A program made the translations under genes and the position numbers. Positions 8,148 through 32,269 of a stretch of 64,000 nt of DNA are shown here, piece by piece (the first letter of the stretch is position 1; the number at the start of each line of letters is the position of its first letter). Under the pieces are notes generated by a model, which saw only the letters and a program-made list of their open reading frames with translations, was not told where the DNA came from and searched no databases. The stretch covers positions 1 to 64,000 of the forward strand of contig NW_027590511.1 in assembly GCF_964213995.1 (NCBI RefSeq), read 5' to 3'. This stretch comes from Mustelus asterias (Eukaryota).

Positions 8148-8500
8148 GAAAGATTGAGAAAGACAGAGCGAAAGATTGAGAGAGAGATTGAGAGAAAGAT
8201 TGAGAGACAGAAAGATTGAGANNNNNNNNNNNNNNNNNNNNNNNNNNNNNNNNNNNNNNNNNNNNNNNNNNNNNNNNNNNNNNNNNNNNNNNNNNNNNNN
8301 NNNNNNNNNNNNNNNNNNNNNNNNNNNNNNNNNNNNNNNNNNNNNNNNNNNGATTGAGACATAGAAAGATTGAGAGATAGAAAGATTGAGAGATAGAAAG
8401 ATTGAGAGATAGAAAGATTGAGAGATAGAAAGACAGAGATTGAGAGAGAGATTGAGAGAGAGAAAGGTTGAAAGAGAGAAAGATGGAGAGGGAGATTGAG
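8148..8500. repeat. (GAAAGATTGAGAGATA)n purine-rich minisatellite
   Basis: Seen directly on both sides of the N gap at 8222-8351. Confidence 0.85.
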
Positions 8501-8577
8501 AGGAGGCTGCAAACAGAGAGAAAAGCAGGGCTGAGGCGGGAAAGGTGCGGACAGAAAGTGAAGAGGTTCATACTCAC

Positions 8578-8633
8578 CATCGCACATGTTTTCCCTCGGT
8601 GATCTCTCCAACTCCTTCCATCCCCTCTCCCAT
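8578..8633 (-). CDS. First coding exon of an unidentified gene, MGEGMEGVGEITEGKHVR (exon 8578-8668)
   Basis: Acceptor ccctttcccag; perfect Kozak ccaccATGG at 8633; GTGAGT donor at 8577; non-coding micro-exon and TATA box upstream. Confidence 0.45.
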
Positions 8634-8748
8634 GGTGGGGAGAGAGATCCTTGGCCAGGGGCTTTGTGCTGGGAAAGGGGGGGTTACAATATCAGAGCTG
8701 GAACTCCATGCAAGCACACACTGACTCACTCACAAAGACACAGCTTAC

Positions 8749-8837
8749 CTGATACTTACCAACCCACGTGTAGAGAGAGACTGGACAATGCATCGCCAGC
8801 CTTTTTATAACCTCACTGAGTCCCACACCTCCCCAAT
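8749..8837 (-). promoter_or_regulatory. TATA promoter plus non-coding first micro-exon with two tandem GTAAG donors
   Basis: TATAAAAA at 8809-8802; CCAAT at 8833-8837; Inr-like CCAGTCT about 30 nt downstream of the TATA; donors at 8759 and 8748. Confidence 0.5.
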
Positions 8838-10739: not shown

Positions 10740-11125
10740 AACATACTGGAATTTAGAAGAATGAGAGATCACTGACAAGATGATAAAAGGTACGGATAAA
10801 GTAGACGTGGAGCGGATGCTTCCTCTTGTGGGGCATTCTAGGACGAGAGGTCACAGTCTTAGGATAAGGGGCAGCAAATTTAAAACAGAGTTGAGGAGAA
10901 ACTACTTCTCCCAAAGGGTTGTGAATCTGTGGAATTCGCTACCCCAAAGAGCGGAGGATGCTGGGACAGTGAGTAAATTTAAGGAGGGGTTAGACAGATT
11001 TTTAATTGGTGATGGGTTGAAGGGTTATGGGGAGAAGGCAGGAAAATGGGGATGAGGAGCATATCAGCCATGATCGAATGACGGAACGGACTCGATGGGC
11101 CGAATGGCCTAATTCTGCTCCTATA
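10740..11125 (+). mobile_element. CR1 LINE 3' fragment
   Basis: ORF 10780-11055 reads TRGHSLRI...RRNYFSQRVVNLWNSLP; tail gatgggccgaatggcct. Confidence 0.9.
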
Positions 11126-11483
11126 TGAGGAATTTCTGACCCGTCCTATTTAATAATACATTTTCTCGTAATAAATGGTACCATTTTATGACATTTCTAA
11201 TTAATTGCTGTACCTGTATATTAGCCCCTTTTGATTCATGCCCAAGGACGGCCCAATCCCTCTGTCCCTCAGAATGTTGTGATCTCGCACCATTTAGTTA
11301 TTAAGTGTATTTTATATTCATCAGGCCAAAATGTACATTTTCACATCCGCCCACATAAACACAATTTGGCGAAGCTTTGCCAATTCACTGAACTATTTAT
11401 GTCCCTTCATCGTCCCCTTACATCCTCATCACCATTCATTTTCCAATCTATCGTTGTGTCGTCAGCAAACTTAACATCCATAT

Positions 11484-12770
11484 CTGCTCTGTAACATATC
11501 ACTGTGTAATCTAACAATTAATCCAGTTCCCCTGGATTACTGCTCTGTAACATATCACTGTGTAATCTAACAATTAATCCAGTTCCCCTGGATTACTGCT
11601 CTGTGACATTTCACTGTGTAATCTAACAATTAATCCAGTTCCCCTGGATTACTGCTCTGTAACATTTCACTGTGTAATCTAACAATTACTCCAGTTCTCC
11701 TGGATTCCTGCTCTGTATCACTTCACTGTGTAATCTAACAATTAATCCAGTTCCCCTGGATTACTGCTCTGTAACATTTCACTGTGTAATCTAACAATTA
11801 ATCCAGTTCCCCTGGATTACTGCTCTGTAACATATCACTGTGTAATCTAACAATTAATCCAGTTCTCCTGGATTCCTGCTCTGTATCACTTCACTGTGTA
11901 ATCTAACAATTAATCCAGTTCCCCTGGATTACTGTTCTGTAACATATCACTGTGTAATCTAACAATTAATCCAGTTCCCCTGGATTACTGCTCTGTGACA
12001 TTTCACTGTGTAATCTAACAATTAATCCAGTTCCCCTGGATTACTGCTCTGTAACATTTCACTGTGTAATCTAACAATTACTCCAGTTCTCCTGGATTCC
12101 TGCTCTGTATCACTTCACTGTGTAATCTAACAATTAATCCAGTTCCCCTGGATTACTGCTCTGTAACATTTCACTGTGTAATCTAACAATTAATCCAGTT
12201 CCCCTGGATTACTGCTCTGTAACATATCACTGTGTAATCTAACAATTAATCCCGTTCTCCTGGATTTCTGCTCCGTAACATATCACTGTGTAATCTAACA
12301 ATTACTCCAGTTCTCCTGGATTCCTGCTCTGTATCACTTCACTGTGTAATCTAACAATTAATCCAGTTCCCCTGGATTACTGCTCTGTAACATTTCACTG
12401 TGTAATCTAACAATTAATCCAGTTCTCCTGGATTCCTGCTCTGTAACATATCACTGTGTAATCTAACAATTAATCCAGTTCTCCTGGATTACTGCTCTGT
12501 AACATTTCACTGTGTAATCTAACAATTAATCCAGTTCTCCTGGATTACTGCTCTGTAACATTTCACTGTGTAATCTAACAATTAATCCAGTTCTCCTGGA
12601 TTTCTGCTCCGTAACATATCACTGTGTAATCTAACAATTAATCCAGTTTTCCTACATTAATGCTCTGTATCTCTTCACTGTGTAATCTAACAATTAAAGC
12701 AGTTTTCCTACATTAATGCTCTGTATCACTTCACTGTGTGATCTAACAATTAATCCAGTTCTCCTGATTT
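11484..12770. repeat. 56-bp tandem satellite, about 23 monomers, with a 7-monomer (392-bp) higher-order repeat
   Basis: Monomer CTGCTCTGTAACATATCACTGTGTAATCTAACAATTAATCCAGTTCCCCTGGATTA; the variant CTGTGACATTT recurs at 11601 and 11993; an isolated partial monomer lies at 12968-13012. Confidence 0.97.
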
Positions 12771-12837
12771 ATGTTTCCCTGTATCAATGTGTAATGGAAC
12801 CCACTCCTGATACCGTGATCACACAAACACGGTGAGG

Positions 12838-12855
12838 GAGCTCCCTCTGGTGGTG
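12838..12855 (-). promoter_or_regulatory. CTCF-like motif
   Basis: Minus strand CACCACCAGAGGGAGCTC, close to the CTCF core CCASYAGRKGGCRS. Confidence 0.4.
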
Positions 12856-13899
12856 ATCTGAGGTAAATGGCCTCTGCTTGGGAGATCAGTGAATTCTCAG
12901 ACTACTGGAGGATCTTTCTTGTTGCAGGATTACGCTGCTGTATTTTTCTTAGGAATAAGAAAAATACGCTCTGTAACATATCACTGTGTAATCCAACAAT
13001 TACTCCAGTTCTCCTTTTTAAACTGTTCATTTATTCTTGAACTTAATTTTCAATGTATACCTACTCTTAAGCTCAGGACACTCAGTAACCGATCTCCGTA
13101 ACTATTTTCACACCTGATCTTTATTGACATTCCTTGGACAGTCCATGTCAGAAAGCACTGAAGATGTTTTCTTGAAAATCAGTTGATTTTTTGACAATTC
13201 GGAACTATCCCTTATTGAAGAATATTATCACTGATATCGAGGAACGTTCACTAATCAATGATTGTTTTCACAGATGGTTACTGATCTGTAAACTGTGAAT
13301 GTTGTTGTTTAAGAGTTGGGATGTAATTTCCGATCTGTGCTTCTTTATGGTGGAAATGTTTAGTAGATCGTGAGCTTAATTCAGTTTCTCAACGTGTTTA
13401 TCTGTTCATTGTACATTGGGATAATAAATCTGTGGATATCTCCATTAAAAAATCACGTTTAAATTTTACTTTCATCATTTGCCTACCGTTTGTATTGAAG
13501 ATTTTGCATTTGTGTGCGTGTGCATGAGCATCTCGTGCTCTGCATTAATCTTTGGCTCTGAGTTAATATGTGTTTATGAGTGTTAATGTGCGCGTTCATT
13601 TGCCAGTGATTGTTGATTTGTGTAGTTGTGTGTCTGCATCTGTGCGCATATTTTATTCTTTTGTCATTGTGTATATATGACTATTATTGTGTGAAGTCTA
13701 TGAATATATATTAATGCCACTCTTAATGCGTGCTATATGTCACTCTAATAATGTTTGTTTCCCTTTCTGTGGAGTTGCCGGCGTTGGACTGGGGTCGGCA
13801 CAGTAAGTAGTCTCACAACACCCGGTTAAAGTCCAACAGGTTTATTTGGTTGCACGAGCTTTTGGAGCGTTGCCCCTTCATCAGGTAACTACTTACTGT

Positions 13900-15020
13900 T
13901 TCCCTTTCTGTGTGCGTCTGTTTCTCCATGAGTCTGTGTGCACGCCTGTTAACATGTCAGTGTATGTATACACGTGTTGCCATTCTTTATAACGGTGCGT
14001 TTATGTATATTTGTGTTTCGATGTGTGGTAATGTGTGCTATGATGTTCTGTTCTATGAGCATGTTAATGTTTGCGTCTACATGTTTGTGTGTAAATGTTT
14101 TGCTGTCTGTTCTTCTATATGCAGTCTGGTGATTTGTTTCTATGTATTTCCATATATGTTTGTGAATGTGTATAACATTGTGTGTCTTTATATCTATATT
14201 CCTATCAGCGTGAACGTGTGCTAATATATATATGTATTTATTTGAGTCAAAGTATGTGCTTGTGTATTTATGTGGGTCTGCATGCGTGTGTATCTGTCTG
14301 TATTGTGTCGATGCATATATGTGTTTGTGTTTGGGTCTGTACCTACTCACGTATGTGTATGTGTATGTACTTGTGTGTTTCATGTGTACATGTGTGGTTT
14401 GTACATATTTGATTATGTGTGTGTATGTTGTTGTTTTAGTGTCTGTTTGTACAAGAGCGCGTGTCTATGTGTTTGTATGTGTGTGTGTGTATGTGTGCGT
14501 CTGTGTGTGTGTGTGTGTGTGCGAGTGAGAGAGAGAGAATGGGTGTGTCCCTATGTATATTTGTGTACGGATGTGTTTGTGTATGGGTGTATTTTTGTGT
14601 GGGTGTATTTGTGTAAGTGTGTATTTCTGTTTGTGCATGTTTTGCCCATGAGTGCATTTGTGTGTGCATTCTTGTTTCTCTGCATGTGTGTTCGTCTGTG
14701 CAAGTATTGAGTGTACCTATGGTGTGTGAAAGTGTATCTGTTGTGTATTTGTGTGTTTCTGTGCCTGTATTTGAATGTGCCTGTCCCTATTTCTGTATAT
14801 GTATGTGTGTGGGGGAATGTGCATGCGTTTGTGTGTGTATATTTACATGTGTCTTTCTGCATTTGTGTGCATATGTGTGAGTATGTGTATTTGTGTGTGT
14901 AGTTGTGCATTTGTGTCGATGTGTGTGTGTGTGTGTATGTGTGTGAGTGTGTGTGTGTGCGCTTATGTGTGTATTTATAATTGTGACAGTTTTGTGGAGT
15001 ATTGTCAGTGTGTGTATTTT
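13900..15020. repeat. Degenerate (TG)n low-complexity tract
   Basis: Seen directly. Confidence 0.9.
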
Positions 15021-16071
15021 TTAGCTGTTGCTCCAAGTTTCACCGCAATCATTAACTGAAAATGATCCAAACAATACGAATAATGGAGCATATTTTCAAT
15101 GTTTTGCTGTATGAATGTAGCTTATGTGAGTGGCACGGTGATATCAGGAGAACGAATCAAATCATTCATTGATGCATCTCGGAAGCATCAGGGACAGAAC
15201 AGTGAAAACTGGGGAGGATTCAATCATTTGTTTCAATTTGCATTGTGGGAAATCACTGCCAGGACATGATTAACAGGAACAAGAGTGCAGAAACATTTTT
15301 AAATTATGTTACATAAGTATATATGCATCACATTGATTAAGATAATGATACTTCAAACTCTGCAGCAAATAAACCGGAAGCTAATTTGTACTGTTGGCAA
15401 CTGGGTTCTTCGAGTAGAGAGCTGGTCCCTTCCAAACACGTTACTTGCGAAGAGGGAGGGAGTGAGCTCATAATTTCCCTCTCTCTACCCGGTGAAGCAA
15501 TGTGCCTGATGGTTCTAACCACTGACGAGGTGGAGGTGAGTGGATTAAATAATGCCATTCCTCCTCTTTTCATTGAGGAAGTGGTGGTACATGGGTTAGC
15601 TACTGCTCTCCCCTCTCTTTGTTGGGTGAGTAGGAATCTGGTATGTTAACAATTTCACTCTCCCTCTCTCTCTGATGGGGGATTGTTGCTCCATGTGTGA
15701 CCCTCACTTCAGTTCCCAGTGGGTGTGGTGCAGCAGCTTAAATATGACATCAATGGTAAAGGCATGGACAACGAGAGAAGCAGGAACACCGAGATCTAAA
15801 TGTTGTGTTTGTTTGTCAGAAATGTTGAATTTGTCAGATTTCTCCTCAGTGGGAGGAAAGTCGGTGAAGATATTTTGCAGAATACTGTAATGAATGTGCT
15901 CTACTCTGTCTCTAACCCAGGGTGTATCTGAGCTGGGTGCACTGGTTCAACAAGGCTTGGGCCCGAGACGTGAAAATACCTGACTCAAACCAAAGATACA
16001 TAGTGGAAGTAAAATTGAAAACCAATCAATTAAGCAATTGGGTATTTCATTTATCGTTGGAGGAAAAAGAT

Positions 16072-16086
16072 TTTATTCTTTTTATT
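16072..16086 (-). terminator. Two poly(A) signals for secretory mu mRNA
   Basis: Minus-strand AATAAA at 16086-16081 and 16077-16072, 28-37 nt after the tailpiece stop. Confidence 0.85.
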
Positions 16087-16113
16087 GAAGTTTTTAATGT
16101 AACCGAGTGATTC

Positions 16114-16505
16114 TCATTGACATGAATTAACGGTGTCCATCAGTGCAAGGGAAATGTTCACAAAACTGGGTTTACCGCTGGATTTGTCAACTGTTCTGTT
16201 GATGATCTTCAAGGGGATGGCTTCATGTCCCACCACACAGGAGTAAGAAGCGCCGCTGGACCATTCCTCTGCTGCAATGGATAACAGGCTGTACATGAAG
16301 AAGGAACTATTCCCGCTCTCCGCCACCACCTCGGTGTTCCTGTAGTTCCCAGGATTCACCGGCTTGTCGTTGACGGTCCACTTGACGAAGATCTCTCGAG
16401 GGGAGAAACGTCTCACTAAGCAGCTGAGGGAGACGAATCTCTGAGCGGAGACTTCTTCTGCCGAGGGCAAGAGGACAGAGACGAACGGTTCCCGCGGATT
16501 TGGAT
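16114..16505 (-). CDS. IGHM: IgM Cmu4 exon plus secretory tailpiece
   Basis: [31 protein letters not shown]...WTV...[43 protein letters not shown]. The tail has the NIS sequon and penultimate Cys; the internal G|GTAAA donor for membrane splicing is at 16175. Confidence 0.97.
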
Positions 16506-17007
16506 CTGCAGAAAATGTACAATAAATGTCAATAAACTGGAGAATTCTGGAGACAATAAAACTGCTGGCTCGATATCAGAAAAATGTGCTTCGTTTCGAT
16601 TTTCAATGTTTCCATTTTTGACTTCCAGTTTGGAGCAGAGGTGAACACAATTATTTTCTCAAATAACTCAGGTGGCTGGACTGGGAAGTTTCAGAAATTT
16701 TACAGCACAGAATCAGGCTATTCAGGCCCAACTGATCGGCTTTATTTTTGGTTTTCTGGTTTTTATGCTCCACATCAGGCTCCTCCTTCGTTATTCGATC
16801 TAAACCCAATAACATCGCCTTCAGTTCACTTTTCATTCATCAACACATCAAATTTCCCCGTAAAAATATCTACAACCCCCAGTTTTTAGTTAGTAGAGTT
16901 TCCACTCAGGGGACACCATTAATGCACTGAATACTGAATATTGACCAGTACACTTACACTGGAAATAGATATAGTGACGCATTTATTGCTTCAATCTCTC
17001 AGCTCAC

Positions 17008-17316
17008 CTGTTTCCTTGTGGATGGATTTTCTTAAAGGAGTCGGCAGATCCTGATGGCTCACCACGCAGTCAAACACAGCCGTACTCAGCCAGGCTTGTG
17101 TCGAGATGTTTAAGTTGCTGACCACGCTGTCAGGATCCGCTCCAGGCTTTTCGGCAATCTCTGATTTCAAATACTTCCTGTCTCGGATCCAGGACACGTT
17201 GACTCCATAGGGAGCATGAGAAATGATGCAGGTTAAGGTCACGGTCGCCTCCAGTAAGACCTGTTCTATTGGTGGTGGCTGTATCGTCACTGTGGTATCA
17301 GGGCACTGGGGAGGAT
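17008..17316 (-). CDS. IGHM: IgM Cmu3 exon
   Basis: [30 protein letters not shown]...VSW...[22 protein letters not shown]; phase-1 AG/GT boundaries. Confidence 0.96.
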
Positions 17317-17760
17317 CTGTGAATGAAAAATGAAAATCAACCCTAGTTCCCTCTTCAGAAGCAGGACAGCAGTCTTCAGCCTGAAGGAGACGAAGTTGCC
17401 TTCGAGATATCAACCTCTAAGTATCACCTTTCAACCTCTATGGAGGATGGAAAACCAGCCTGCTCTGTGAAATTATTCTCTTTTTGTTCAAGTATTTTAG
17501 CAGCGGTATCATTCTCATGAATCAACATTGCAGTATTCCCCAACAAATATACCATTCCTGAACTCAGGAACCAAGTACTGGCAGTTAGTTTATAAGTAGG
17601 GTGGATGCACTTCCCAATATTTTACCCCTATGCTGTGACCTGTGAAACAGTCCGACACCGACTCTCTCTCCAAACCTTACCAGCTGTCTCAGGAAAAAGC
17701 TGACATCAAGACTAGCTCGCTCACTATGTTACTTTAAAATGGAAGGGAACACTATTTCAA

Positions 17761-18076
17761 GGGGAGGCAGTGGCATGGTGGTGTTGCCAATTGTCTTGTA
17801 ACCCAGGGCACGACTCTGGGGACACAGATTCGAATCTCACCACTGCAGGTGGTGAAATTTGAATTTAGTAAAAATCTATAATTAAAAGTCAAATGATCAT
17901 CATGAAGCCATTGTTGTAAAAACCCACCTGGTTCACGAATGCCCTTTAGAAAAGTAAATCTGCTGTCTTTATCTGGCCTGGCATGCATGTGACTCCAGAT
18001 CCACAGCAATGTGGTTGACACTTAAGTGCCCTCAGGGATGGGAAATAAATGCACATCTCATGAAGGAATAACAAAA
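17761..18076 (+). mobile_element. Shark tRNA-derived SINE (SacSINE1/Deu-like) in the Cmu2-Cmu3 intron
   Basis: Box A/B-like head and core aaaacccacctggttcacgaatgccctttag; related copies at 40803-41140 (+) and about 10130-10500, 31140-31450 and 42660-43000 (-). Confidence 0.7.
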
Positions 18077-18236
18077 ATTGCTGTTGTGATGAAATTCTGA
18101 ATGGGGCACTGTCCTAATGCAGCAAACCACATGACAGCAAATTAGAAGTTGTTCTATCTTTGTACTAACTTTAATAGATCCCTAATTTCGATTAACATCG
18201 GAATGGTATATTTTATCCTCGGTTTGAGTCTCTTAC

Positions 18237-18548
18237 CCAGAGATCCGCTGATGTTCTGACTCTGGGTGAATCCTTGATGAGTGACCTGGCAGGTATAGAC
18301 TACTTTGCTGAACCATTCCTGAGCGGAGACTGTCAGCCGACTGCTGGCCGAGAAGTTCCCGTTCACTTCACAGGCGGGAGAGGTGACAATTCCTGAATCC
18401 ATGGGTTGTCCATTCTTCAGCCACTTCACCGTCATTGACTTTGGCTGGAAATCGATGATTGAACAGACGATGGTTGCAAATTTTCTGGTGGTGATTTCTT
18501 CACTGGAACTCACGGTGAGGATAACGGTTGGGGGGAGAATGCGTGGGC
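18237..18548 (-). CDS. IGHM: IgM Cmu2 exon
   Basis: [47 protein letters not shown]...YTCQVTHQG; phase-1 splice sites. Confidence 0.96.
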
Positions 18549-18649
18549 CTTCAACAAACAAATGTTCAGACGTTACTTGAAGATTCAATTGACATCAATT
18601 AAAATTAGTTCTTTTATTTGAGCACCATAGCTGCCGATTTGAGAATCAT

Positions 18650-19365
18650 ATCCATGGTTTGGTTGAATTGGCAGGGAAATGGCGAATGGAATTCAACCGT
18701 CAAAAGCGCCACACAATGCATTTGGGGAGGGAAAACAAAGCAAGGCAATAAACTGGAATGTTAAGAGGGATTGAGGAAATGCAAGACCTTAGAGTGCATG
18801 TCCACAGGTCCTTGTAGATGGTAGGGCAGCTGGAAAAGTTGATCAAGAAAGCATATCAGATTAGTTCCTCTGTTATGTGAGATATTGAATGCAAAAACAG
18901 TGATACAATGATGGAGCTGTATAAAACGCTAGTTAGGCCACGTGTACAGTTCTGGTCACCACGTTGCAGGAATAACGTAATGACTCTGGAGAGAGATGAG
19001 GTTTACAAGAATGTTGCCAGGGACTGAAAATTGCAGCCATGAGGCGAGATTGGATAGGCAGGGTTTGTTCTCTTTAGGAAAAGAGGAGGCTGAGGCGTGA
19101 CATAATTGTGGTTCACAACAAAAATAAGGGACGTAGGCAAAAATAATTCATTCCCCAAGTGGAGGGCTCAATTACCAGGGAGCATGGTCATTTAAAAGGC
19201 ATCTGGGTCTGCATCTCAAGTGCTTTAAGCTGCAATGCTACGGAGCAAGGGCTGGAAAATAGGCTTACTTTGTCAGGCTCGTTTATTTGTTCTCCATTTT
19301 GGCCAGCACAGACATGATGGGCCAAATGGCCTCATTCTGTACAGTAACATTTCTGTTGTTCTTTG
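18650..19365 (+). mobile_element. Decayed CR1 LINE fragment in the Cmu1-Cmu2 intron
   Basis: Remnants of CR1 RT-tether motifs (tggcgaatggaattcaac, gttctggtcacc) and a CR1-type 3' tail. Confidence 0.75.
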
Positions 19366-19509
19366 GTTCTGAGCAACTTTTCAGTCAGGAGGCACTTACC
19401 TGGATTTTGCATAATTCAATTTTTCAGAGTGCTACAGATCAGTTATAACTAAAGCCTTATATAGTTCAATCAGAGCGTTCCTGTCTTGCCCAAGTTCCAC
19501 AACACTTAC

Positions 19510-19809
19510 ATTGCATTCCAATGCTCTTGACCGAGCTGCTGTGTCGAACCTCACACTTGATTTTGCTGCACTCTCCCTCTGACTGGGTGATGGTTAACTG
19601 GCTGCTCAAGGTGTAGGTTCCCTTCGCGTTTCTCACTGATGGATAAGTCTTAAATCCAGTGGCGATCAGCTGCCCATTTTTCTTCCAGGTCAGTTTGGAG
19701 ACATCTGGAGAGTAGTCCATCGCCAAACAGCCGTAGGTGATGGAGCCAGCGGAGTTGTGTTGCTGACAGGAAGAGACGAGGCTGTAGAGAGTGGGCGGAG
19801 ACGGTGTCG
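19510..19809 (-). CDS. IGHM: IgM Cmu1 exon
   Basis: [46 protein letters not shown]...[12 protein letters not shown]...CEVRH, the shark mu CH1 signature; acceptor tttcccag, donor GTAAGT. Confidence 0.97.
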
Positions 19810-21090
19810 CTGGGAAAGAATAGTCGATTCAACAAGTTAGATTCTTACCTGCGTTTATTAATTAATCAAACATATTTATACAAGTAAGTTTCTATATTAG
19901 GTATAGCTCTTGCGGCTAAAGGGATCAATGGATATGGGTAGTCGGCGGGGTCAGGACATTGACGAGCCGTGATCAAAGTGAATGGTAGAGCAGGGTCAAA
20001 GGGCCGAATGGCCTACTCCTGCTTCTATTTTCTATGTTTCTACATCACGATTTGTCTAGAATTATGAACTTAACTTAATATTTCCCGATTAAGACCTACA
20101 TACACCTTTCAGCTTCTGTTACTCCTATCATTTGAGAATCGCCATCTTTGTAGAAACTCACATCAATGTCTCGACCTCTATCAGGTTGGAAAGACAAAAA
20201 CATTTTGATGTCATTGTAATGACATACCATTCATTGGATTAACAGAGAAGAGTAAAGAGTTTCTCCATTACTTCAGGCACTACCTATTTTTCAAACAACA
20301 GGACTTTGTGATGAAGAAGTTGTCTCTTCATTCATATCAGCCACTCGCCTGATGAAAGAGCTCCAAAAGCTCACGATTCCAAATAAGCCTGTTGGAGTTC
20401 AACCTGGTGTTGTGAGACTCCTTACTGTGCCCACCCCAACCTAGCGTCGGCATATCCACATTGTAGTTTTGGCTATTGCCTGTGTTCAAACTAACTGATG
20501 CCCCTTCCTCTCTCCAACTCACTGCCTCTCACTCCACAAAATGAAGATTAGTGACTTTGCTTCAAAACTACCTTCGGAATGAATACTTACTGAATGACCA
20601 GGAAACTCTCAATGTGATTACAAATTCAAATAATTGCAACATTGACTAATTGAAGGGTCATACATTAATAGCAAGAGTTGGCCATTCGGGCCCTGACGTC
20701 TCCTCCATTATTCGCTGAGATTACAGATGATCTGGTTGTGGTGCTAGCTCTATTTTGCACATCCTCACTCCGCCCGTCGATCACCCACTCTCTGCCCATT
20801 TTCCCGACTCTCTGCGCTTTCCCCTGGCTCGATGGGCTGAATGGCCTCCTTCTGCACTGTAGCATCCTATGATTCTACTCTATGGTGTCAAGGACAGACA
20901 CTCTGNNNNNNNNNNNNNNNNNNNNNNNNNNNNNNNNNNNNNNNNNNNNNNNNNNNNNNNNNNNNNNNNNNNNNNNNNNNNNNNNNNNNNNNNNNNNNNN
21001 NNNNNNNNNNNNNNNNNNNNNNNNNNNNNNNNNNNNNNNNNNNNNNNNNNNNNNNNNNNNNNNNNNNNNNNNNNNNNNNNNNNNNNNNNN

Positions 21091-21580
21091 TGATAGAATG
21101 CGTTTGCACGTGTGTGAGACAGTGGGCTGTGCGTGCAAGAGGAGAGAGTGTGCGTGAGAGAAAGGATGTGTGAGATAATGTGTGTGTGTGAGACAGAATG
21201 TGTGTTTGAAGAGTTATTCTTTGTGTGTGACAGTGTGTCTCTTCTTGAAAATGTATGTGTGTGGAGGGGCGGGGAGAGTGTGTGTGGGGAGTCTGTGTGA
21301 AAGAGTACTTCTGTGTGTGAGTGTGTGTATGTTGATGTGAAAAGGAGTGTATCTATTTGAGATACACGATGTCTGTGAAAGAGAGTGTGTGTGCTTGAGG
21401 GAGGGTGTGTGTGTGGGAGAGTGTTGTGTTCATGTGAAAGACAGTGTGTGTGAGAGGGAGTGCCTATTGGAAAGCAAAATAATATGTTCATCAGTGTGTG
21501 AAACTGTGCATGGGATGGCGTGTGAGTGCGAAAGATGTGTACAATGTGTGTGGGAGATAGAAGCAATGTGGGGTGTTTGA

Positions 21581-21613
<33 letters not shown>

Positions 21614-23050
21614 GAGGGGCGGGGAGAGTGTGTGTGAGCGAGAAAAAGTGTGAAACTTAGACAGAATGGATGCGTGAGTGTGTGTGAGTGAAATGACTGT
21701 TGAGAGAACATGTGTCTGTGATAGGTGGAGTGTTTAAAGAGCGATACATTGTATATACATGTGTGTTCGAGTGTAAGAGAAGGAGAGACTGTGTGAGAGA
21801 TTGTGTGCGTGTGAAAGAGAGGGTGTTTGTGAGAGACAGGGTTTGAGAGCAAGATTGTGCATGTGAGACAATGTGTAAGGGGGAGGGTCGGGATGGCGAC
21901 CTCCTCGTGAACCTGCTCCTGGGCCTGGCGAAACGCGCCATTTACCGGTCCAGGCTGCGGGCGATCGAGGGGGCCGTCCATCCTGACTGTCTTCCCCTCT
22001 ACCGCGGCTACGGTCGCGGCCAGGTGTCCCTGGAGAGGGAGCATGCGGTGTCCACGGGCGAGGTTGACGCTTTCCGCGCCCGCTGGGCACCGCAGGGGTT
22101 GGGGTGCATTATTGGCCCTAATAATCACATTTTAATTTGATGTTTTTAAGTTTCCTTTGTACTTTGATTTCTGTTCGGGCTGTTCCCCCTCCTTTTTGGG
22201 GAGCTGCCCCTTTTACTTTGTCCTGATTTAATCTGAGTTTGTTTACTTGGTTTGGTTTGACCTAAAAAGAGGACAATGTGTAAGGGAGTGAGCGTGTGAA
22301 ATAGAGAGAAATATGTGCCTGTGTGAGAGAATACATGTGCAAGTGTTCGTATGAGTGAGAGAGGGCATCGGAATGTGTGTGAGACGAAGTGAGAGTGTAC
22401 GGAAGAGGGAATGTGAGAGGCATAGTGCATGTGTGTGTGAGAGAGCGAATGTGTGCGCGAGACTGTGCTTATGGGAGAGACTGTGTCTGTGTGTAAGAGT
22501 GTGTGTTAGAGTGTGTGCATGTTCTATGTTTGTGAGAGAGTGATTGTGAGAGAGCCAGTGTGTGAGAGCAAGAATGTAGAGGTGTGAGATAGTGTGCGCA
22601 AGAGAAATAGAAATATGTGCGTGTGTGTGTGTGTGAGAGAGAAAGAGATGCGTGTGCGAGAGGAATTGTGAGAGAGCGTGTGGAGAAATGTGAGACAGCT
22701 TGAGCGTGTGTGACAGAGAGTGGGAGAGAGTCCATGTGAGAGTGCGTGCGCGAGGGTGTGAGACTGTGCTGATGTGAGAGTGTGTGTCTGTGTATAAGAG
22801 AAAATGGGTGGGTGTGTGGGGATGTGAGCGCTTTTGTGGATGGGGATGTGAGAGATTGATGGAGAGAGCGAGACGATGTATGTATTTGTATTGAGAGAGT
22901 GTATGTGTAACGTGAGAGAGAGAATGTGTATGGGTGTGTAAGAGAGACCGTATGAGAGAGAAAGTAAGTGTGAGTATGTATGTGTGTGTGTGTGCATGTG
23001 TGAGAGAATATGAGAGTATTTATGTGTGTGAGAGTGTGTGATGTGTATAA
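21091..23050. repeat. (TG)/(GA)-rich low-complexity tract in the J-C intron
   Basis: Seen directly. Confidence 0.85.
21882..22271 (+). mobile_element. 5'-truncated Tx1 copy (390 bp) with a 15-bp target-site duplication
   Basis: Near-identical to the 3' end of the 50796-58000 element; TSD GACAATGTGTAAGGG at 21867-21881 and 22272-22286. Confidence 0.95.
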
Positions 23051-24134
23051 GTCTCTATTTGGCTGATTCAGTCTGGAAAAGCACACTCACTCCACACATA
23101 CTCACCCATTCACACAGTAAGTGGAAGTGACAAGTGAGCACAATACGGAGCGCGGGCTAAGGGTTGGAAAAACATTTAAATCTTTCGCAATCAGTCGCAA
23201 TTGAATAATTCACCCTACTCAATGAGGGAAACCTGTAAAAACTCAAGAAATATGACACAATCCAGGGCAAAGCCACCCACAAGATTATCCGCCCCCTCAT
23301 TCACCCTATTCGCTCTCTCCATCACTAACAAGCAGTGACAGCAGTGTGTGTTATATACAAGATGCACTGCAGCAACTCACCAAGGCTCCATAGTAAACAC
23401 TGTCCAAACCCGTTGCCTTTATATCCTAACAGGATAAGGGCAGCAGCCACATATGAAGACTACCACCTGCAAGCTCCCCTCCAAGACACACACCATCCTG
23501 ACTTGAAACAATACCTCAGTTCCTTCTGGGTCAAAATCCTGGAACTTCCACCTAACAGCACGGCGGATGCCTGCAGCATATGGATTGCAGTTATTCAAGG
23601 ATGCTTTATATCAACACTTTCTCAAGGAACAATTATTGATGATTAAAACTTCTGGCCGAGCAAATGACTCTAAAATGGGTTTAGAAGATTAAAAATAAGA
23701 TGCAAATGAATTTGACCCTTCAACTGTCATACCAAACAGGTCATGGACTGCTTTACTACGGAGCACAATATAGTAAATCTCACTTTGCATTTGCTCATCG
23801 AACATTCCCAAGGCCGGTACATCACTGGTTAAAAATCATCCAAATCTCCCTCTACAATCTGACGTTTCTGCTCTCTCTGATGGTCACAATATGCTTTAGG
23901 GATCTCATTTCTGAGACGCCGAGCCAAACATCAAGTCAAACTGTCACATTTCTCACAGATACAAGTTTATTGAAGAAATAAATCAAATTTCACTCCCTGA
24001 AATACAGCAGAAGGAACCAGAAGTTTTACAACCAGTCAGGCAGATTCCTGGTCCCAACACAGTGACCACGCGCGCAGAAACAGAACAGACACAAACGGTG
24101 CAACAATCGATTTCCCAGCAGGTAGGTATGATCA

Positions 24135-25847: not shown

Positions 25848-27720
25848 TGTAACCGCTCAGGATCACCGAGTTGAAACAATACAGAAACAATTGAGAAACA
25901 CCAAACCATTTCACAAATTTTGGGATGAGATTAGTGATTAATTACCTCTGCATCCAACTACAAATTACTTGGAAGGAATGCTGCGCCTGCACAGAAACAA
26001 TGTAATAATCGGGCACAAAAATTGCCAAATAGCGTTTTATTGCCAATTATTCTCCAAAACTCAGATTTAAGTGAATGCGAACTTCATCGGGGATATAACA
26101 ATTAATGCAAAGTATCTTGTTGAACTGAGCGCTGCTGTGGAAACAGCATGTTATCATGGAAATAGTTTCTGGAATTATCACAAAATATTTCCAGCCGAGA
26201 AACCTTTCTGGTCATGTTAATTGTATGCAAAGCACAGCAGAACTATTAACGCCGATTAATGCGAAATGATATTAATGGAAAATAATCTTTTGTGAATATG
26301 TAGTTATGTTACCGATTAATAACAGTTTGATTTATATTAATTTTACTATCAAACTTGTTAACGAGAAGTTTCTTTTTGCAGCAACTACTTAGTGTCCGAT
26401 TGAGCGTTGTAAGACATGATTTATTTTAATTTCTAAGTTAGTTAAAATTTATTAAAATGCTGTAATACCTTTATTTTATTTATTTCACAACCTGCTTATT
26501 TTCTCCCTACAAGGATTTTCAAACTCATAGATTATTTGCATTTAACCAGAAAACGTGTAACCGCTCACTGCCACCGAGTTTAAACAATGCAGAAACACCA
26601 AAACATTTCACACATTTTAAACATTCTTAGTGACCCAACAACAGAACCTCCTCAACAGAAACACACCAAAACACATCAATGAGGGAATGAATCCGTTTCA
26701 CGGGGACGCAACTCAATTATCCATTCAACAAAATCAAAAATATGATTGCAAGGAAATCTCAATATTCAATCCGGCAAACCAGCTCGTCACCAAATATATG
26801 AATGATTGAACTAAACAGAAATTTGGAATAAGAGCAATAGCATTGCGAGGAGGTGGAATATGTCCAACAAATTAAAATTGAAATTTTACCACATTCTATT
26901 CATATTGGGTCATATTTCAAACAGATTTCAAACATATTAAAATATTGGGTGGGTAAAAGCTGCAGCCGTCAGATGCCACCGAGGTTAAACATGGCATGTA
27001 TCCCAAATTGTGAATGCTGTGGTAAACTATGTTTTGGACGAGTGGCATAAACCATGGTTTGGTTTAACCTGCAATTATCAGCTACGATTTAAAAAAATAC
27101 AAATACAATAAAGCCTGCCTGATTTCTGTCTGCAGGCACGCGTCAAGTAGTTTAAAACCCGCAGACTGTTTGTATTCAATCACAAAGTGTGTAACAGCTC
27201 AGTGTCACCGAGTGGAAACAATGCAGAATCTCCGAACCATTTCACAAATTTTACTTATTCAAAGTCACCCAGCCAGACAACCTCCTCACCAGAAACACGC
27301 AGCACTGAGGGACTGAACCCCGGTTCATGCAGAAGCAGCTCAATTCTACAAACAGTTGCAACAGAATCAAATTTCACATTGGCAGAAAATCTCAATTTAA
27401 AATCCAGCCAATCTGACCATCACCAAAGCAACTAATGATTAAAATAAGCACAACAATGAGATAACAAAACCAGATTGTGATTAAGCGGAACATGTTCGCA
27501 ACATTAAAGTAGAAACTTTAACACATTTTGTTAATATTGGGTTAGATTTCAAACACTTGTGCAGTAGATGGTGCAACTCGCAGCCACTAGATGTCACCGA
27601 GATTAAACATTGAAGAAACGCCGAACTGTTTAACAAAAGGAATGCATTTAAAGTAACCCAGCCACACAATGTCCTCAGCAGATAAACACCAAATCACAAC
27701 AAGAGACTGAATCACTCAGT
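25848..27720. repeat. Degenerate repeats just 3' of JH
   Basis: Core TGTAACCGCTCAxTGTCACCGAGTTxAAACAATGCAGAA at about 25848, 26556 and 27190; partial copies at about 26970 and 27590. Confidence 0.8.
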
Positions 27721-27913
27721 ATCGCCTTTTGTCAATTAACAGTAGAATTCTATAACCCCCATTTTAAGCAGGATCACATGAAACATTGTAAAGATTTTCA
27801 GCACAGAATCCACCAAACTATATTACATTGAACGAATGAATTAATAAAATCGAGAAAAAGTAAAAAACAAAAACTCAAATAAAACACTGACTAAATAAAT
27901 GCATGGTTCTTAC

Positions 27914-27961
27914 CTGCAGTCACCGTCACCATGGTCCCTTGTCCCCAGTAGCCCATGGCGT
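27914..27961 (-). CDS. IGHJ: JH segment AMGYWGQGTMVTVTA
   Basis: WGxG motif; G|GTAAGA donor; flanked by a 23-RSS. Confidence 0.97.
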
Positions 27962-28000
27962 CACAGTGTCACATTCTCTAGGCTGGGTCATACAATAACC
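27962..28000 (+). other. JH 23-RSS
   Basis: CACAGTG (27962-27968) + 23 nt + ACAATAACC (27992-28000). Confidence 0.95.
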
Positions 28001-28327
28001 ATCTCTGCACAAAATAGACAGAAATCCATCAGTATTTTAAAAATTCACAAGCCAGAGGGAAAGCAAATCACTGCATGTTCATGAAATTATTATTGCACTG
28101 GTGGATACCGTTCGCTCTTCGTAAATAACCTTAATGTTTTATATTTCATAGAGGATCACATGATCAAGTTACTGAAAACACCAACTGATAATCAAATAGT
28201 TATCATAAATTTTCCATATTAATTCTCGCTATTTGTGTAGTGCTGGGACATAAATAATACAGCACTGTAAACAATGCTGGATTGGAAAACAGAGCACTGC
28301 CCCAGTCTCGGTCAATTAGTGCTGAGG

Positions 28328-28395
28328 GGTTTTTGTATTGACAGTAACTGCTGTGCCACCCAGTTATCACAGTGAGACACAGCATGACAAATACT
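28328..28395 (-). other. DH segment (D2-type) ATAACTGGGTGG at 28356-28367, flanked by two 12-RSS
   Basis: J side: CACAGCA+12+ACAAAAACC (28355-28328, minus strand). V side: CACAGTG+12+ACAAATACT (28368-28395, plus strand). Confidence 0.95.
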
Positions 28396-28694
28396 GTGCC
28401 CGACTGCTAACTGTTTAATTTCACTGCTGTCTCAAAAATCTGATTCTGCCTCATCCACGAGCGAATGAGTGAGATATTTCAGCTTGTCCTGGTCATTGTA
28501 TTTATAAAGGGGATCGGAATGCTTTTAAACTCTCTGTGTAGATTTAGCATATCGGTAAATATAGATTTTATGGGAAGATTTTTATACCTTTTCACAAACT
28601 AATATTACTTCCACACATTATTTCACTGAAGCTCGTTTACTTTGAAACTCCTGCTGTGGTACTGATCACCAATTTGAGCAATCTCTTTCCATGA

Positions 28695-28732
28695 GGTTTT
28701 TGTATGAGGATGTCGCTGTGCTCAGCACTGTG
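28695..28732 (-). other. 22-bp-spacer RSS following VH(D1)
   Basis: CACAGTG (28732-28726) + CTGAGCACAGCGACATCCTCAT (22 nt) + ACAAAAACC (28703-28695). Confidence 0.95.
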
Positions 28733-29043
28733 ATCCCACTGTAGTGCACAGTAATAGATGGCGGTGTCTTCGGTCTTCAGCCTTGTCATCTCCAAAGAGA
28801 AGATTTTGGTTGAAGTGTCTTTAGACGCACTAAATCGATCCTTAATTGCTGGGGCGTAGCTGTTGCTGGATGAACTATAGTAGCGAACCAGCCACTCCAA
28901 CCCCTGTCCTGGAACCTGTCGGATCCAGTACATGTTATAGCTGCTAAGATCGAAGCCGCTGGTTTTACAGGTCAGTGTCAGGGAGCCTCTGGGACGCCCG
29001 GTCTCTGCCTCTGGCTGAGTCAACACAACCTCCGACTGGACAC
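28733..29043 (-). CDS. IGHV: IgM VH exon (28745-29043), fused in frame to a D1-like 12-mer (28733-28744)
   Basis: [104 protein letters not shown]; canonical Cys/Trp/Cys. Confidence 0.96.
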
Positions 29044-29174
29044 CTGTAAAAATAGTTGAAAAAACACGAGGATTAATCCTGGTGTAATGATTTTTGACTC
29101 GGGAATATTACAGAGATGGACTAAAACTGAGACAGTAACTGTGGGAGACTTAGACAATGAAAATAACTACTCAC

Positions 29175-29220
29175 CGGATAAGAAAGTCAGCAACAAACTG
29201 AGAGAAATCGCCGACCTCAT
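29175..29220 (-). CDS. IGHV: VH leader exon MRSAISLSLLLTFLS(G)
   Basis: ATG at 29220; hydrophobic signal peptide; G|GTGAGT donor; 131-nt intron to the V exon. Confidence 0.95.
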
Positions 29221-29310
29221 CCTTCTGGTGATTTGGGGGAAATGGTTGTGTCAGGAACTCAGTGAACAAACCAACTCCCGGACTGTTGGATTCCGGTCCC
29301 AGTGAGCGGC

Positions 29311-29385
29311 ATTTAAATACCCGGCAGAAGGGGGCGGCTTTCCAGGCGCCGCCTGTTGATTCCCTGCTGGAGGCGGCGACTGGAT
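29311..29385 (-). promoter_or_regulatory. VH promoter: TATA-like TATTTAAAT plus GC boxes, no octamer
   Basis: TATTTAAAT at 29319-29311, about 90 nt upstream of the ATG; GCCGCC/GGGGCGG boxes upstream. Confidence 0.65.
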
Positions 29386-32269
29386 CCAGGTCCTACCTTC
29401 CACACCCCCAACAGAATGGACTTCCAGATTTACAATAGGTTAATATTAAAATGGGCATTTTATCTGTGTCGGGATATTTGTTTGGCTGAGTATGTTCATT
29501 GTATTGTCTCCATTATTTCTGATGGTGATATTGCAGTTCATCATTTCTTTATTTAAATAACTGATTCCATTGTAAATATGGTGATTTTATTACCACGCCG
29601 CCAAGAAGAACACAAATCTGAAAATGATGAAATAACGTTTTTGGAAAATAAAGAGACCGTCAGTCTGTGTTGCGACAATTCCGGGTCTCTGTCACATCAC
29701 AATAATAAAGCATCATTTATCAGAAGAATTCTTATCGATTTCTGTAACTGAATGCGGAGTATGAACAAAGTGATTCTATTTACAGTGAGGATGGCTTTCA
29801 CTGTACAATTTGGGTTTGGAGATGAGAAGAAACTCTCACACAATACAATGTTTCTCCTTATATTTGTCAAACTGCACAATCTCGAAGACAGCCCTTTGAA
29901 AATAATAAGAATCCCGCCTTCCTGATAACTAAGTAGTGAGTTGACAGAGAAACATAAATTTAACATCGACTTTTGACAGAGAAGCTAATGAATCGGAACG
30001 GACACCGAGATCATTAAAGTTCTCCTTCAGCATCCAAATCGTGGCAACTCACTCTATTGGCCACCGGCTGTCTAATATTCATTGGTATTGGGAACACAAG
30101 ATATCAGGGCTTTGCTGCACATTGCACAATATCACAAGAATAAATGTTTTACCTTCCATTGAATCAGGTTATGAACTGATCATTTCTCCACTCATTGCAG
30201 CTATGAGAGGAATTCTTCAATAACAGGAATCAGATTATACTGTACAATAGAACACGGTGTAAATCAGGTACAAGAGACGCTGCTGTTTAAATAGGGGGCA
30301 AAACTTTCAGAATATTCCAGGAATCCCTGTTGTTCATGTCAGTTTTATGATGTTCTTTTAATATTATTTCGATGCATTTTTGCCATTGCTCTGATCTCAA
30401 TTGACTGGGGAATTGGGACCATCAACATCTCTCTCTCGCATTTCATGAAGTGGTTAATAAACAGACTTTAATTATTGGAATGACATTTACTTGGAAGTTA
30501 TACAAATGAAAAATCATCTGGTCACTTTACTGTTTTGCGATGCTATTTACTCACATAATGAACAGGACATTGAATGAAAATATTTGATTAGAATGATTAC
30601 GATTTAAAATGTGTCTTTCTTGTGGGAATGAAACGTTTATTGTTTAAATGGCTGAATCCCATTTTGTCCATTCAGGTTCACACTAATCTGACCCACACAG
30701 TATTTGGCAGCAATCCAGCCTGCTGTCAAATGCTCAAAGTTATTGACAGGAAGCATCTGGGGGTGTTTGTGCAGTAGATCTGTTTCCTCAGTACTGACCG
30801 CTTGGCTGCAAGCCAACTTCAAGCCCTTCACATTGTCAATGAGCCCTATTTATAAAGAAATCTACCCAGCAACAGTACTGGAGGCAATTTAATATTTTAA
30901 GTTGTAAGTCTATATGGATTTTACCCATCTCTCAAGAATGACAATTTATGCAGCTTCTCTGACACCCTGTTAGCAACAATGATGATTTTTCCAACACATC
31001 AGGATATTGTCATGGATGGATCGAAAGAATTACAGGCAGACTGAGAGATGACTCAGGGAGACGTTACATGTTGTAATACATGAACTTGTATGCTTGTGTA
31101 TTCTTTCCCTATCTCGTTCCATGATTTGTTTGAGTTGTTGGAACGACGAGTACATTATGCCTGTCCCAAATTCCCTTGAACTGAATGGTTTTCTATGTCA
31201 CTTCTGAAGAGTCAACCATTTTGTGTCCGTCTGGAGTCACATTCTTGTGAGACCAGGGAGCGATGGCAGATTTCCCTCATTGGGGGATCAGAGAGGGTTC
31301 TATGGTCGCCATTAGAATGTATTCCATATTTATTAATTGAATTCAAATTCCACCAGCTTCCTCCGATTTAAATCGCTGTCCCTGTCCCATCATTGTCCTG
31401 GGCCTCTGGATCACTGGGCCAATTAAATTAATATTACGTCACCATCTGCGCAAACAATAAATGAATGACTGTCTTGATGCAGGAATGAATGACAGTTGAA
31501 TGAATGATAGTTGGATGCCTGAATATTTTGATTGAGGAATCAGTGAATGGATTGAAAGATGCACTGTTAAATGGTACTGAAAGATGTTGTTCTACATTCC
31601 CATATTTGTAGTTGACTGGTCCATAAATTGAAACAGCTCCTTTATCCCATTTCTGTCAGTCTAATAACGTCAATACTTCCAGAGGTTCTGGGAGAAATCC
31701 AACCCTAGTTTCTAGGGAGCTAGCAAGCTGATCCTCACGAAAAGAAGAGGGGATTTTCCTGCAGCACGGATGGTTCATTTCTCTGCTGATGCTGAATATT
31801 CATATCCAAGATCGAAAGAGGGAACATGATTTGGCTGAGGAGGGAGGTTTGTAATATTTGAAACATGTGCAGCAAATCACTCACCATGCCCTCACCCAAA
31901 TTAGTGAAGGTAACAAGCTGTAAAATAAATAATGTGGCAACAGATATGTTGTGAAACTCACTGGACAACGACAAGTGTTACATTATTTCCCAAAACTGTG
32001 TAATAATGAATCGGGATTTAAAGATTCAGTAAAATCATATTTGGTGCAGGTAGTTTAATTTGTATGATTACTTTGGAAATCATCACACCAGTTATGATTC
32101 AGGGGTTTAAAGCGCAGAGTCTGCTGGGTAGCTACTCATGATCCTCGGTCTGTATTCATTCAATTTCCAACTGAATTCTGGGACAGATTTTATCCTTGGT
32201 GACAAAAAGGTGTCAATAAATGTTAATATCAATAAATTATTCAAAGCAAAGTTGTATAGAAGGAAATAC

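What the first reader, a model, noticed from the sequence alone, without database searches (positions are those of the whole stretch)
28695..28760. VH appears germline-joined to D1 only (VD1-D2-J), fixing the start of CDR3 as CALQWD
Seen: V ends TAT TAC TGT GCA without the usual AGA (Arg) and runs directly into CTACAGTGGGAT, then a consensus RSS with a 22-nt spacer. Only one free D (12/12 RSS) lies before J (23-RSS), at spacings of about 300 and 330 bp. Known: shark IgM clusters are typically V(23)-(12)D1(22)-(12)D2(12)-(23)J, and germline-joined clusters exist in elasmobranchs. From recall, CTACAGTGGG is the shark D1 core. Inference: a RAG-type V-to-D1 join became fixed in the germline with trimming and no evident N-nucleotides, locking D1 in the LQWD frame. 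The cluster can still rearrange but with two junctions instead of three, giving a semi-invariant antibody.
Basis: partly seen in the sequence, partly recalled or inferred. Interest (0 to 1): 0.85.

Follow-up and report, generated by a model that had tools for sequence, protein, structure and literature searches.

The report
Shark IgM cluster with pre-joined V-D1
This is a shark IgM heavy-chain gene cluster in which the V segment is already fused to the first D segment in the assembled genome, a small extension of the long-known habit of sharks to carry partly pre-assembled antibody genes.

Summary
On the minus strand lies an IgM minicluster. It has a leader, an intron and a VH exon ending TGTGCA (28745). 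A 12-mer follows directly (28744-28733), then a perfect heptamer, a 22-nt spacer and a perfect nonamer (28732-28695). One D with 12/12 RSS lies 299 bp on, and a 23-RSS JH 327 bp after that. Four C1-set exons with a mu-type tail follow about 8 kb downstream.

The 12-mer is D1. Contigs of related organisms carry the same 22-RSS behind an unjoined D1 that has its own 5' 12-RSS. One such D1 holds the 12-mer exactly, so there are no N nucleotides. The cluster is therefore VD1-D2-J, a RAG-type coding joint that still needs two joins.

Germline status rests on the assembly. No listed contig was shown to bridge the joint, and the runs laid are not the window's individual. Expression is untested, and "semi-invariant" is overstated.

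Germline VD-J, VD-DJ and VDJ clusters are in the reviews. VD-D-J appears in print only as a somatic intermediate.

First-stage notes list three more VD-D-J clusters elsewhere in this genome; I did not check them.

Verdict: a new member of a known kind, of modest interest.

The parts
29312..29319 (-). TATA-like TATTTAAA, about 92 nt upstream of the ATG. No octamer (ATGCAAAT or its complement) at up to 1 mismatch within 300 bp upstream.
29175..29220 (-). Leader exon (MRSAISLSLLLTFLS + first base of a Gly codon), followed by a GT donor at 29174
29044..29174 (-). Leader intron (GTGAGT ... TTTTACAG). It is retained, so the cluster is not a retrocopy.
28745..29043 (-). VH exon, V-derived part. It ends TGTGCA and lacks the usual Arg codon. 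Open frame; Pfam V-set E 7e-17.
   Evidence: best named relatives are Scyliorhinus torazame 84% and Chiloscyllium punctatum 81%
28733..28744 (-). D1 remnant CTACAGTGGGAT, fused in frame to V (reads LQWD)
   Evidence: It is identical to the 3' 12 nt of an unjoined D1 in an organism B contig; a D1 variant occurs in organism A contigs (loose ends at 28745 and 28733).
28695..28732 (-). D1 3' RSS: CACAGTG, 22-nt spacer, ACAAAAACC
28396..28694 (-). D1-D2 intersegment interval (299 bp)
   Evidence: Contigs of all 4 runs lie on it at 90% or more. For example X1 covers 28367-28570 with 0 other letters and X3 covers 28367-28660 with 1 (table 8).
28368..28395 (-). D2 5' RSS: nonamer AGTATTTGT, 12-nt spacer, heptamer CACTGTG
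28356..28367 (-). D2 coding ATAACTGGGTGG (frames ITGW / *LG / NWV)
28328..28355 (-). D2 3' RSS: heptamer CACAGCA, 12-nt spacer, nonamer ACAAAAACC
27962..28000 (-). JH RSS: nonamer GGTTATTGT, 23-nt spacer, heptamer CACTGTG
27914..27961 (-). JH coding (..AMGYWGQGTMVTVTA), followed by a GTAAGA donor
16114..19726 (-). Four constant-region exons, given as ORF limits and not exact exon ends: 19726-19466, 18588-18154, 17413-16991 and 16470-16114. The last carries a secretory tail ending ..MDTVNSCQ.
   Evidence: C1-set in all 4. The last exon is 94% identical to a fragment that a source names C mu 4 of Carcharhinus plumbeus.

Best explanation
This is an IgM heavy-chain minicluster of a carcharhiniform-like shark. 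A single RAG-type V-to-D1 coding joint is present in the assembled, presumably germline, DNA: VD1-D2-J-Cmu.

The join removed the V RSS, the V-D1 interval and the D1 5' RSS. It trimmed the V end (the usual Arg codon is gone) and 2-3 nt of D1, and added no N nucleotides. D1 is left in frame as LQWD.

The remaining signals keep the 12/23 grammar:
- The VD1 end carries D1's 22-spacer RSS. It can pair only with the 12-RSS on the 5' side of D2.
- The 12-RSS on the 3' side of D2 pairs with the 23-RSS of J.

So a lymphocyte needs two joins instead of three, and D2 cannot be skipped. The first CDR3 residues (C-A-L-Q, often W) are predetermined. The rest still varies through two junctions.

Shown here: the anatomy, the D1 identity of the 12-mer, and intact reading frames and signals.
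Inferred: that the join arose by RAG activity in germ cells, that it is inherited, and that the cluster is used.
For: - Anatomy and signals.
- V-set exon plus four C1-set exons on the same strand. The last C exon is 94% identical to a named C mu 4 fragment of the sandbar shark.
- D1 identity (table 7):
  - An organism B contig fits the window up to 28745. It then continues into two more D1 bases, a heptamer, a 12-nt spacer and a nonamer.
  - One contig each in X1 and X3 (organism A) fits up to 28733. Each continues into a variant D1 and the same kind of 5' heptamer.
- V genes of other sharks end YYCAR or YYCTR in 7 of the 8 sequences read that reach the Cys.
- The leader intron is kept, so this was a DNA-level event and not a retrocopy.
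- Segment spacings of 299 and 327 bp fit the 250-500 bp given for such clusters.
- Germline partial and full joins are an established trait of cartilaginous fish and are attributed to RAG in germ cells.
- A single lymphocyte's junction would not become the consensus of an assembly (inference).
- First-stage notes list three more VD-D-J clusters on other pieces of this genome. These are unverified leads only.
Against: - No independent sample was shown to carry this exact joint. Table 8 shows 32 pieces and leaves 708 unshown, and none of the listed pieces bridges 28745/28746.
- The four runs share differences from the window at several places where every contig laid there, in all four runs, reads the other letter (for example 28077, 28096, 28121 and 28272). 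The best run holds only 0.63 of the sampled words. So the runs are relatives or other copies, not the source individual.
- VD-D-J is a frequent somatic intermediate in nurse shark lymphoid tissue, especially thymus.
- No RNA run holds the stretch.
- No octamer was found upstream.
- No transmembrane exons were found downstream, where two N runs lie.
Confidence: 0.85

Rival explanations
1. The assembly captured a somatic one-step (1R) VD-D-J intermediate from a lymphocyte or thymocyte, and the germline allele is an ordinary V-D1-D2-J cluster.
For: VD-D-J products are common in nurse shark thymus and are present in spleen DNA. No listed contig from another sample was shown to bridge the joint.
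Against: - Somatic junctions differ from cell to cell, so one of them should not win an assembly consensus (inference).
- The joint has no N nucleotides.
- First-stage notes report several clusters of the same layout elsewhere in this genome. These are unverified.
Confidence: 0.04
2. There was no join. This is a single-D cluster (V23-12D12-23J) whose V gene simply has a longer 3' end, and the likeness of the 12-mer to D1 is coincidence or gene conversion.
For: The RSS spacers alone (22, 12/12, 23) would also fit a tetrapod-like V-D-J cluster. First-stage notes report single-D clusters in this genome, but those are read as D1-D2 fusions.
Against: - The same RSS (fitting the window at 90% or more) follows free D1 elements that have their own 5' 12-RSS in contigs of organisms A and B.
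- 13 consecutive bases in front of the heptamer equal the end of one such D1.
- The V lacks the Arg codon seen in 7 of 8 other shark V ends.
Confidence: 0.05
3. The join is germline, but the cluster is an unused relic: not transcribed, or unable to make a membrane receptor. In that case no special antibody subset exists.
For: [quoted passage not shown]
- No RNA holder was found.
- No octamer was found.
- No transmembrane exons were found.
Against: - V, D1, J and all four C exons are open, and the leader and J splice sites are intact.
- All RSS heptamers keep CAC, and three of four nonamers are at or near consensus.
- The promoter-proximal 130 bp are nearly identical in high-depth contigs of organism A. 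X1 covers 29279-29408 with 1 other letter.
- N runs could hide the membrane exons.
Confidence: 0.25

Closest known systems
Partly germline-joined IgH clusters of cartilaginous fish (VD-J, VD-DJ), as listed in reviews
   Same: A coding joint between neighbouring segments of one minicluster is present in the germline, with loss of the two RSS and the interval. It is attributed to RAG acting in germ cells. A V-D1 joint is part of the VD-DJ form.
   Different: Here only the V-D1 step has happened, and D2 and J are both still free with working signals. This layout is not among those named in the two reviews read (passages only).
Somatic VD-D-J '1R' intermediates of nurse shark lymphocytes and thymocytes (Malecek et al. 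2008, PMC2435157)
   Same: Identical configuration. It shows that V-D1 can be the first and only step, since shark rearrangement is unordered (passages).
   Different: Those are somatic products found in lymphoid DNA, and each cell makes its own junction. This one sits in a genome assembly and has no N nucleotides.
Nurse shark IgM1gj (fully germline-joined VDJ)
   Same: A germline-joined IgM-type heavy chain with predetermined CDR3. It shows that such genes can be expressed, mainly in neonates.
   Different: IgM1gj is fully joined, needs no RAG and has three C domains. This cluster needs two joins and has four C exons.
Chicken VH pseudogenes (germline-fused VD)
   Same: V fused to D in the germline, interpreted as RAG-mediated germ-cell recombination followed by duplication (passage in Lee et al. 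2000).
   Different: From recall, the chicken copies lack leader and RSS. In the passage read they serve as gene-conversion templates. This cluster keeps its leader, its RSS and its own D2, J and C.

Membership tests
Elasmobranch IgM heavy-chain minicluster | Leader, intron and V-set exon, followed within about 0.25-0.5 kb steps by D and J segments on the same strand | tested here: met
   Gaps are 299 and 327 bp, against 250-500 bp and about 400 bp in the literature.
Elasmobranch IgM heavy-chain minicluster | RSS grammar V(23) / (12)D1(22-23) / (12)D2(12) / (23)J | tested here: met
   Of the six signals, the four that a V-D1 join would leave are present with spacers 22, 12, 12 and 23. The V RSS and the D1 5' RSS are absent, as expected after a join. 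The canonical 22 for D1 is recalled, not taken from a call.
Elasmobranch IgM heavy-chain minicluster | Own C mu gene with four C1-set exons and a secretory tail, several kb downstream | tested here: met
   J to the first C exon is about 8.2 kb, against 6.3-6.8 kb in nurse shark.
Elasmobranch IgM heavy-chain minicluster | Transmembrane exons downstream of C mu 4 | tested here: inconclusive
   The hydropathy scan and a nurse shark membrane primer found nothing convincing. N runs at 7796-8147 and 8222-8351 lie downstream.
Germline-joined Ig cluster | Coding joint of two identifiable segments, with both RSS and the interval lost | tested here: met
   V ends at TGTGCA and the next 12 nt equal the 3' part of a free D1 seen in organism B. 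D1's 3' RSS follows.
Germline-joined Ig cluster | Joint present in non-lymphoid DNA and inherited (same joint in several individuals) | tested here: inconclusive
   It is present in the assembly. Among the 32 listed pieces of the 4 runs laid, none bridges the joint, and 708 pieces were not shown. The runs are not the source animal.
Germline-joined Ig cluster | DNA-level event, not a processed transcript copy | tested here: met
   The leader intron and both remaining intersegment intervals are retained.
Somatic 1R rearrangement intermediate | Confined to lymphoid DNA, with the junction differing between cells and often carrying N additions | not testable with these tools
   Only one sequence of the joint is available, and it has no N nucleotides relative to the organism B D1.

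The most novel reading that the evidence does not exclude
VD-D-J is not a one-off. On this reading the genome keeps germline-fixed copies of every one-step RAG intermediate (VD-D-J, V-DD-J, V-D-DJ) beside open clusters. That would be a frozen record of unordered RAG cutting in germ cells. The VD-D-J copies would form a duplicated, expressed subfamily that gives an innate-like IgM subset with a predetermined CDR3 start.
Probability: 0.2. Interest if true: 0.55.

Novelty: new member of a known kind. Interest (0 to 1): 0.32.

Why it matters
Germline-joined antibody genes are the main evidence that the RAG recombinase has acted in shark germ cells and reshaped antigen-receptor loci.

A cluster frozen after the first of three steps, with a clean N-free junction and a recognisable donor D1, would be a well-defined example of such an event.

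- It allows a direct comparison of joined and open paralogues, to date the event and to count independent events.
- It gives a marker for expression: CDR3s beginning CALQ on this V. That would show whether partly joined clusters feed a restricted, possibly early-life repertoire.

For a specialist this is expected biology in a species whose loci may not have been described. It is not a surprise.

Tried and rejected
**Paralogous clusters.** I wanted these through the look-up of encoding contigs, using the shark V proteins. The only comparison is through the contig ends.

**Metagenome scan.** A scan of metagenome contigs for the D1-plus-heptamer 19-mer found 0 stretches. This was expected, since that collection is microbial.

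**Signal joint.** A head-to-head heptamer pair, as a reinserted excision product would leave, has 0 matches in the window at up to 2 mismatches.

**Earlier findings.** A search by sequence was blank. The words CALQWD and LQWD occur in no note.

**Literature.**
- 'VD-D-J' and five spelling variants are held by 1 paper in the library, where the term is used for somatic products.
- Two further searches gave no genome-wide survey of joined IgH clusters.
- The primary papers on horned shark and skate loci (PMC454840, PMC330358) are not held. For two J Exp Med papers only the abstract and references were readable.
- I therefore cannot exclude that a germline VD-D-J cluster is described in one of them.
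- I did not ask for supplements. Figure S1 and Table 1 of PMC2435157, which hold the junction sequences, were not seen.

**Transmembrane exons and octamer.** Neither was found. I draw no conclusion about the exons because of the N runs.

**Depth.** Depths are about 370 for identical intersegment pieces in X1, against about 30-40 for some longer contigs. This hints at about ten near-identical copies. The tool states that depth is not copy number, so I do not rely on it.

**Retrocopy origin.** Rejected, because the intron is kept.

**Recombination between the V RSS and the D1 RSS.** Rejected, because it would have removed the D1 coding bases.

Full report
**What is there.** The feature lies on the minus strand. 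Reading 5' to 3':
- A TATA-like TATTTAAA at 29319-29312.
- A leader exon at 29220-29175, a GT donor, and a 131-nt intron ending TTTTACAG.
- A VH exon from 29043. Its open frame reads [42 protein letters not shown]...TAIYYCA. Pfam calls it V-set, E 7e-17.
- The V-derived part ends TGTGCA at 28745.
- The 12-mer CTACAGTGGGAT (28744-28733) follows without a break.
- Next come the heptamer CACAGTG, a 22-nt spacer and the nonamer ACAAAAACC (28732-28695). Such a consensus signal occurs once in the window, against 0.01 expected.
- 299 bp further lies one D, ATAACTGGGTGG (28367-28356). Its 5' RSS is AGTATTTGT-12-CACTGTG and its 3' RSS is CACAGCA-12-ACAAAAACC.
- 327 bp after that lies JH, with RSS GGTTATTGT-23-CACTGTG. 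It encodes AMGYWGQGTMVTVTA and ends in a GTAAGA donor.
- About 8.2 kb downstream on the same strand are four open C1-set exons. The last ends in a secretory tail and is 94% identical, over 59% of its length, to a fragment that a source names C mu 4 of the sandbar shark (7 hits among 14 candidates).

The best named V relatives are Scyliorhinus torazame (84%) and Chiloscyllium punctatum (81%) (20 hits among 21 candidates). So this is an IgM minicluster of a shark near the Carcharhiniformes. The species itself is not named by any search. The window holds only this one VH: 1 exact site among 40 at up to 2 mismatches.

I laid Logan contigs of four public runs on 27700-29500 at 90% likeness. The runs were X1 and X3 (organism A, two samples), X5 (organism B) and X8 (organism D).

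All four runs cover the D1-D2 and D2-J intervals with near-identical pieces. For example, X1 covers 28367-28570 with 0 other letters, and X3 covers 28367-28660 with 1 other letter and 1 gap.

Three contigs come up from the RSS side and then leave the window exactly inside or at the edge of the 12-mer:
- **The X5 contig** fits through 28745. It then continues, read on the gene's strand, from a nonamer, a 12-nt spacer, the heptamer CACTGTG and two further coding bases. That is a free D1 of 15 nt with its own 5' 12-RSS. Its last 12 nt are the window's 12-mer, and the base before them is the A that the window shares with GCA.
- **The X1 and X3 contigs** fit through 28733 and continue into a 14-nt D1 variant preceded by the same heptamer.

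The length of the fitting part of these contigs is not printed. Each fits at 90% or more, and the fitting part ends at that place. Of the loose ends, 24 rows were shown and 53 were not.

So the RSS at 28695-28732 is the 3' RSS of D1, not a V RSS, and the 12-mer is D1 minus its first 2-3 bases. No base at the joint is unaccounted for, so there are no N nucleotides, and one base of overlap is possible.

On the V side, I read 9 of the 20 shark V proteins. One stops before the Cys. Of the other 8, 5 continue CAR, 2 CTR and 1 CGV, and none continues CAL. The missing Arg codon therefore fits trimming of the V end.

**How it most likely arose and works.** A precise loss of everything between two coding ends, with nibbling and with both signals gone, is the footprint of a RAG coding joint. 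The retained leader intron and intersegment intervals rule out a retrocopy.

The remaining signals obey the 12/23 rule. The 22-RSS of VD1 can pair with the 5' 12-RSS of D2. The 3' 12-RSS of D2 pairs with the 23-RSS of J. VD1 cannot join J directly. The cluster therefore needs two joins, always through D2.

D1 is locked in the frame L-Q-W-D, but its 3' end is still a coding end. In one search three contigs join V to D2 with D1 remnants in between (joints 28362/28365/28361 to 28745/28747). In the X1 and X3 contigs, whose D1 remnants can be read against the free D1 variant of organism A, the last 1-2 D1 bases are lost. So only C-A-L-Q, and often W, would be constant. 'Semi-invariant' overstates the restriction. 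All of this paragraph beyond the anatomy is inference from the established rules of V(D)J recombination.

**Germline or somatic?** The literature passages matter here.
- Reviews state that cartilaginous-fish clusters can be partly (VD-J, VD-DJ) or fully (VDJ) joined in the germline through RAG activity in germ cells (Lee et al. 2000).
- Malecek et al. 2008 show that VD-D-J is also a frequent somatic one-step product, especially in thymus.

I could not show the joint in an independent sample. The best run holds 0.63 of the sampled words. None of the 20 listed runs is on record as RNA; three are guessed to be RNA.

At several places every contig laid there, in all four runs, reads a letter other than the window's (28077, 28096, 28121, 28272; at 28805 this holds in X1 and X8 and for most of the depth in X3 and X5). 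So the runs represent relatives or other copies, not the source animal. None of the 32 listed pieces bridges 28745/28746, and 708 pieces were not shown.

My judgement that the joint is germline rests on three points:
1. One cell's junction cannot become an assembly consensus.
2. There are no N nucleotides.
3. First-stage notes of this scan report three further VD-D-J clusters, and also V-DD-J, V-D-DJ, VDD-J and open clusters, on other pieces of the same genome. I could not check these.

**Function.** Expression is untested. I found no octamer at up to 1 mismatch within 300 bp upstream. I also found no transmembrane exons downstream, where two N runs lie. These observations keep open the reading that the cluster is an unused relic. 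Lee et al. note that joined H chain genes of the horned shark were not found expressed. Against that reading, every coding part and signal is intact.

**Comparison and novelty.** The closest known things are:
- The partly joined IgH clusters of sharks and skates. A V-D1 joint is already part of the VD-DJ form.
- The fully joined nurse shark IgM1gj.
- The somatic VD-D-J intermediate.
- The germline-fused VD pseudogenes of the chicken.

The layout VD-D-J as a germline state is not named in the two reviews I read (passages only). In the searchable library the term occurs in 1 paper, for somatic products. The primary papers of 1988-1990 were not available, so I cannot claim it is unpublished. I file this as a new member of a known kind, of modest interest.

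**Limits.**
- Read laying and the look-up of sequencing runs allow one call each, and both were used.
- Supplements were not consulted.

Noticed in passing
window 28361-28365 joined to 28745-28747 (contigs of runs X1, X3, X5): Three contigs join the V end to D2 with D1 remnants or other letters in between, and keep what lies beyond D2 (side 24-29 letters). These are VDD-J type copies in related organisms, either germline-joined paralogues or somatic products.
   Followed up: partly
proteins P0001 (Scyliorhinus torazame), P0007 (Chiloscyllium punctatum), P0008 (Rhincodon typus): Predicted 'hypothetical' V proteins of other sharks read on past YYC[AT]R. P0001 and P0007 run into D-like residues and then what looks like a 12-spacer RSS. 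P0008 runs into a full J (..YWGQETMVTVTA). They look like germline VDD-J and VDDJ clusters swallowed by gene predictors.
   Followed up: no
window 5813-7793: Long G-rich tandem arrays on the plus strand: a 17-nt unit of about 103 copies, then 23/46-nt units. GC is up to 0.71 and GC skew +0.55 to +0.65. They lie downstream of C mu 4 and next to N runs at 7796-8147 and 8222-8351.
   Followed up: no
window 11484-12766: A 56-nt tandem repeat of 22.9 copies with 93% matches, downstream of the C mu gene. It accounts for most of the near-matches to the V-end pattern.
   Followed up: no
window 1-16113, minus strand: No convincing IgM transmembrane exons. The hydropathy scan gave only low-complexity stretches, and a nurse shark membrane primer has 0 matches at up to 3 mismatches. 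This agrees with the first-stage note on this window. The N runs could hide them.
   Followed up: partly
window 29220-29520, minus strand: No Ig octamer at up to 1 mismatch within 300 bp upstream of the leader ATG, only a TATTTAAA about 92 nt upstream. Yet 29279-29408 is nearly identical in a high-depth contig of organism A.
   Followed up: no
window 20841-23086: The J to C mu intron holds an N run (20906-21090) and about 2 kb of low-complexity sequence that gives long spurious ORFs rich in T, H, S and L.
   Followed up: no
window 27700-29500 against runs X1, X3, X5, X8: At several places every contig laid there, in all four runs (three coded organisms), reads the same letter against the window (for example 27819, 27821, 27863, 28077, 28096, 28121, 28272, 29056). 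The window's copy is thus the odd one out, being either a diverged paralogue or another species.
   Followed up: no
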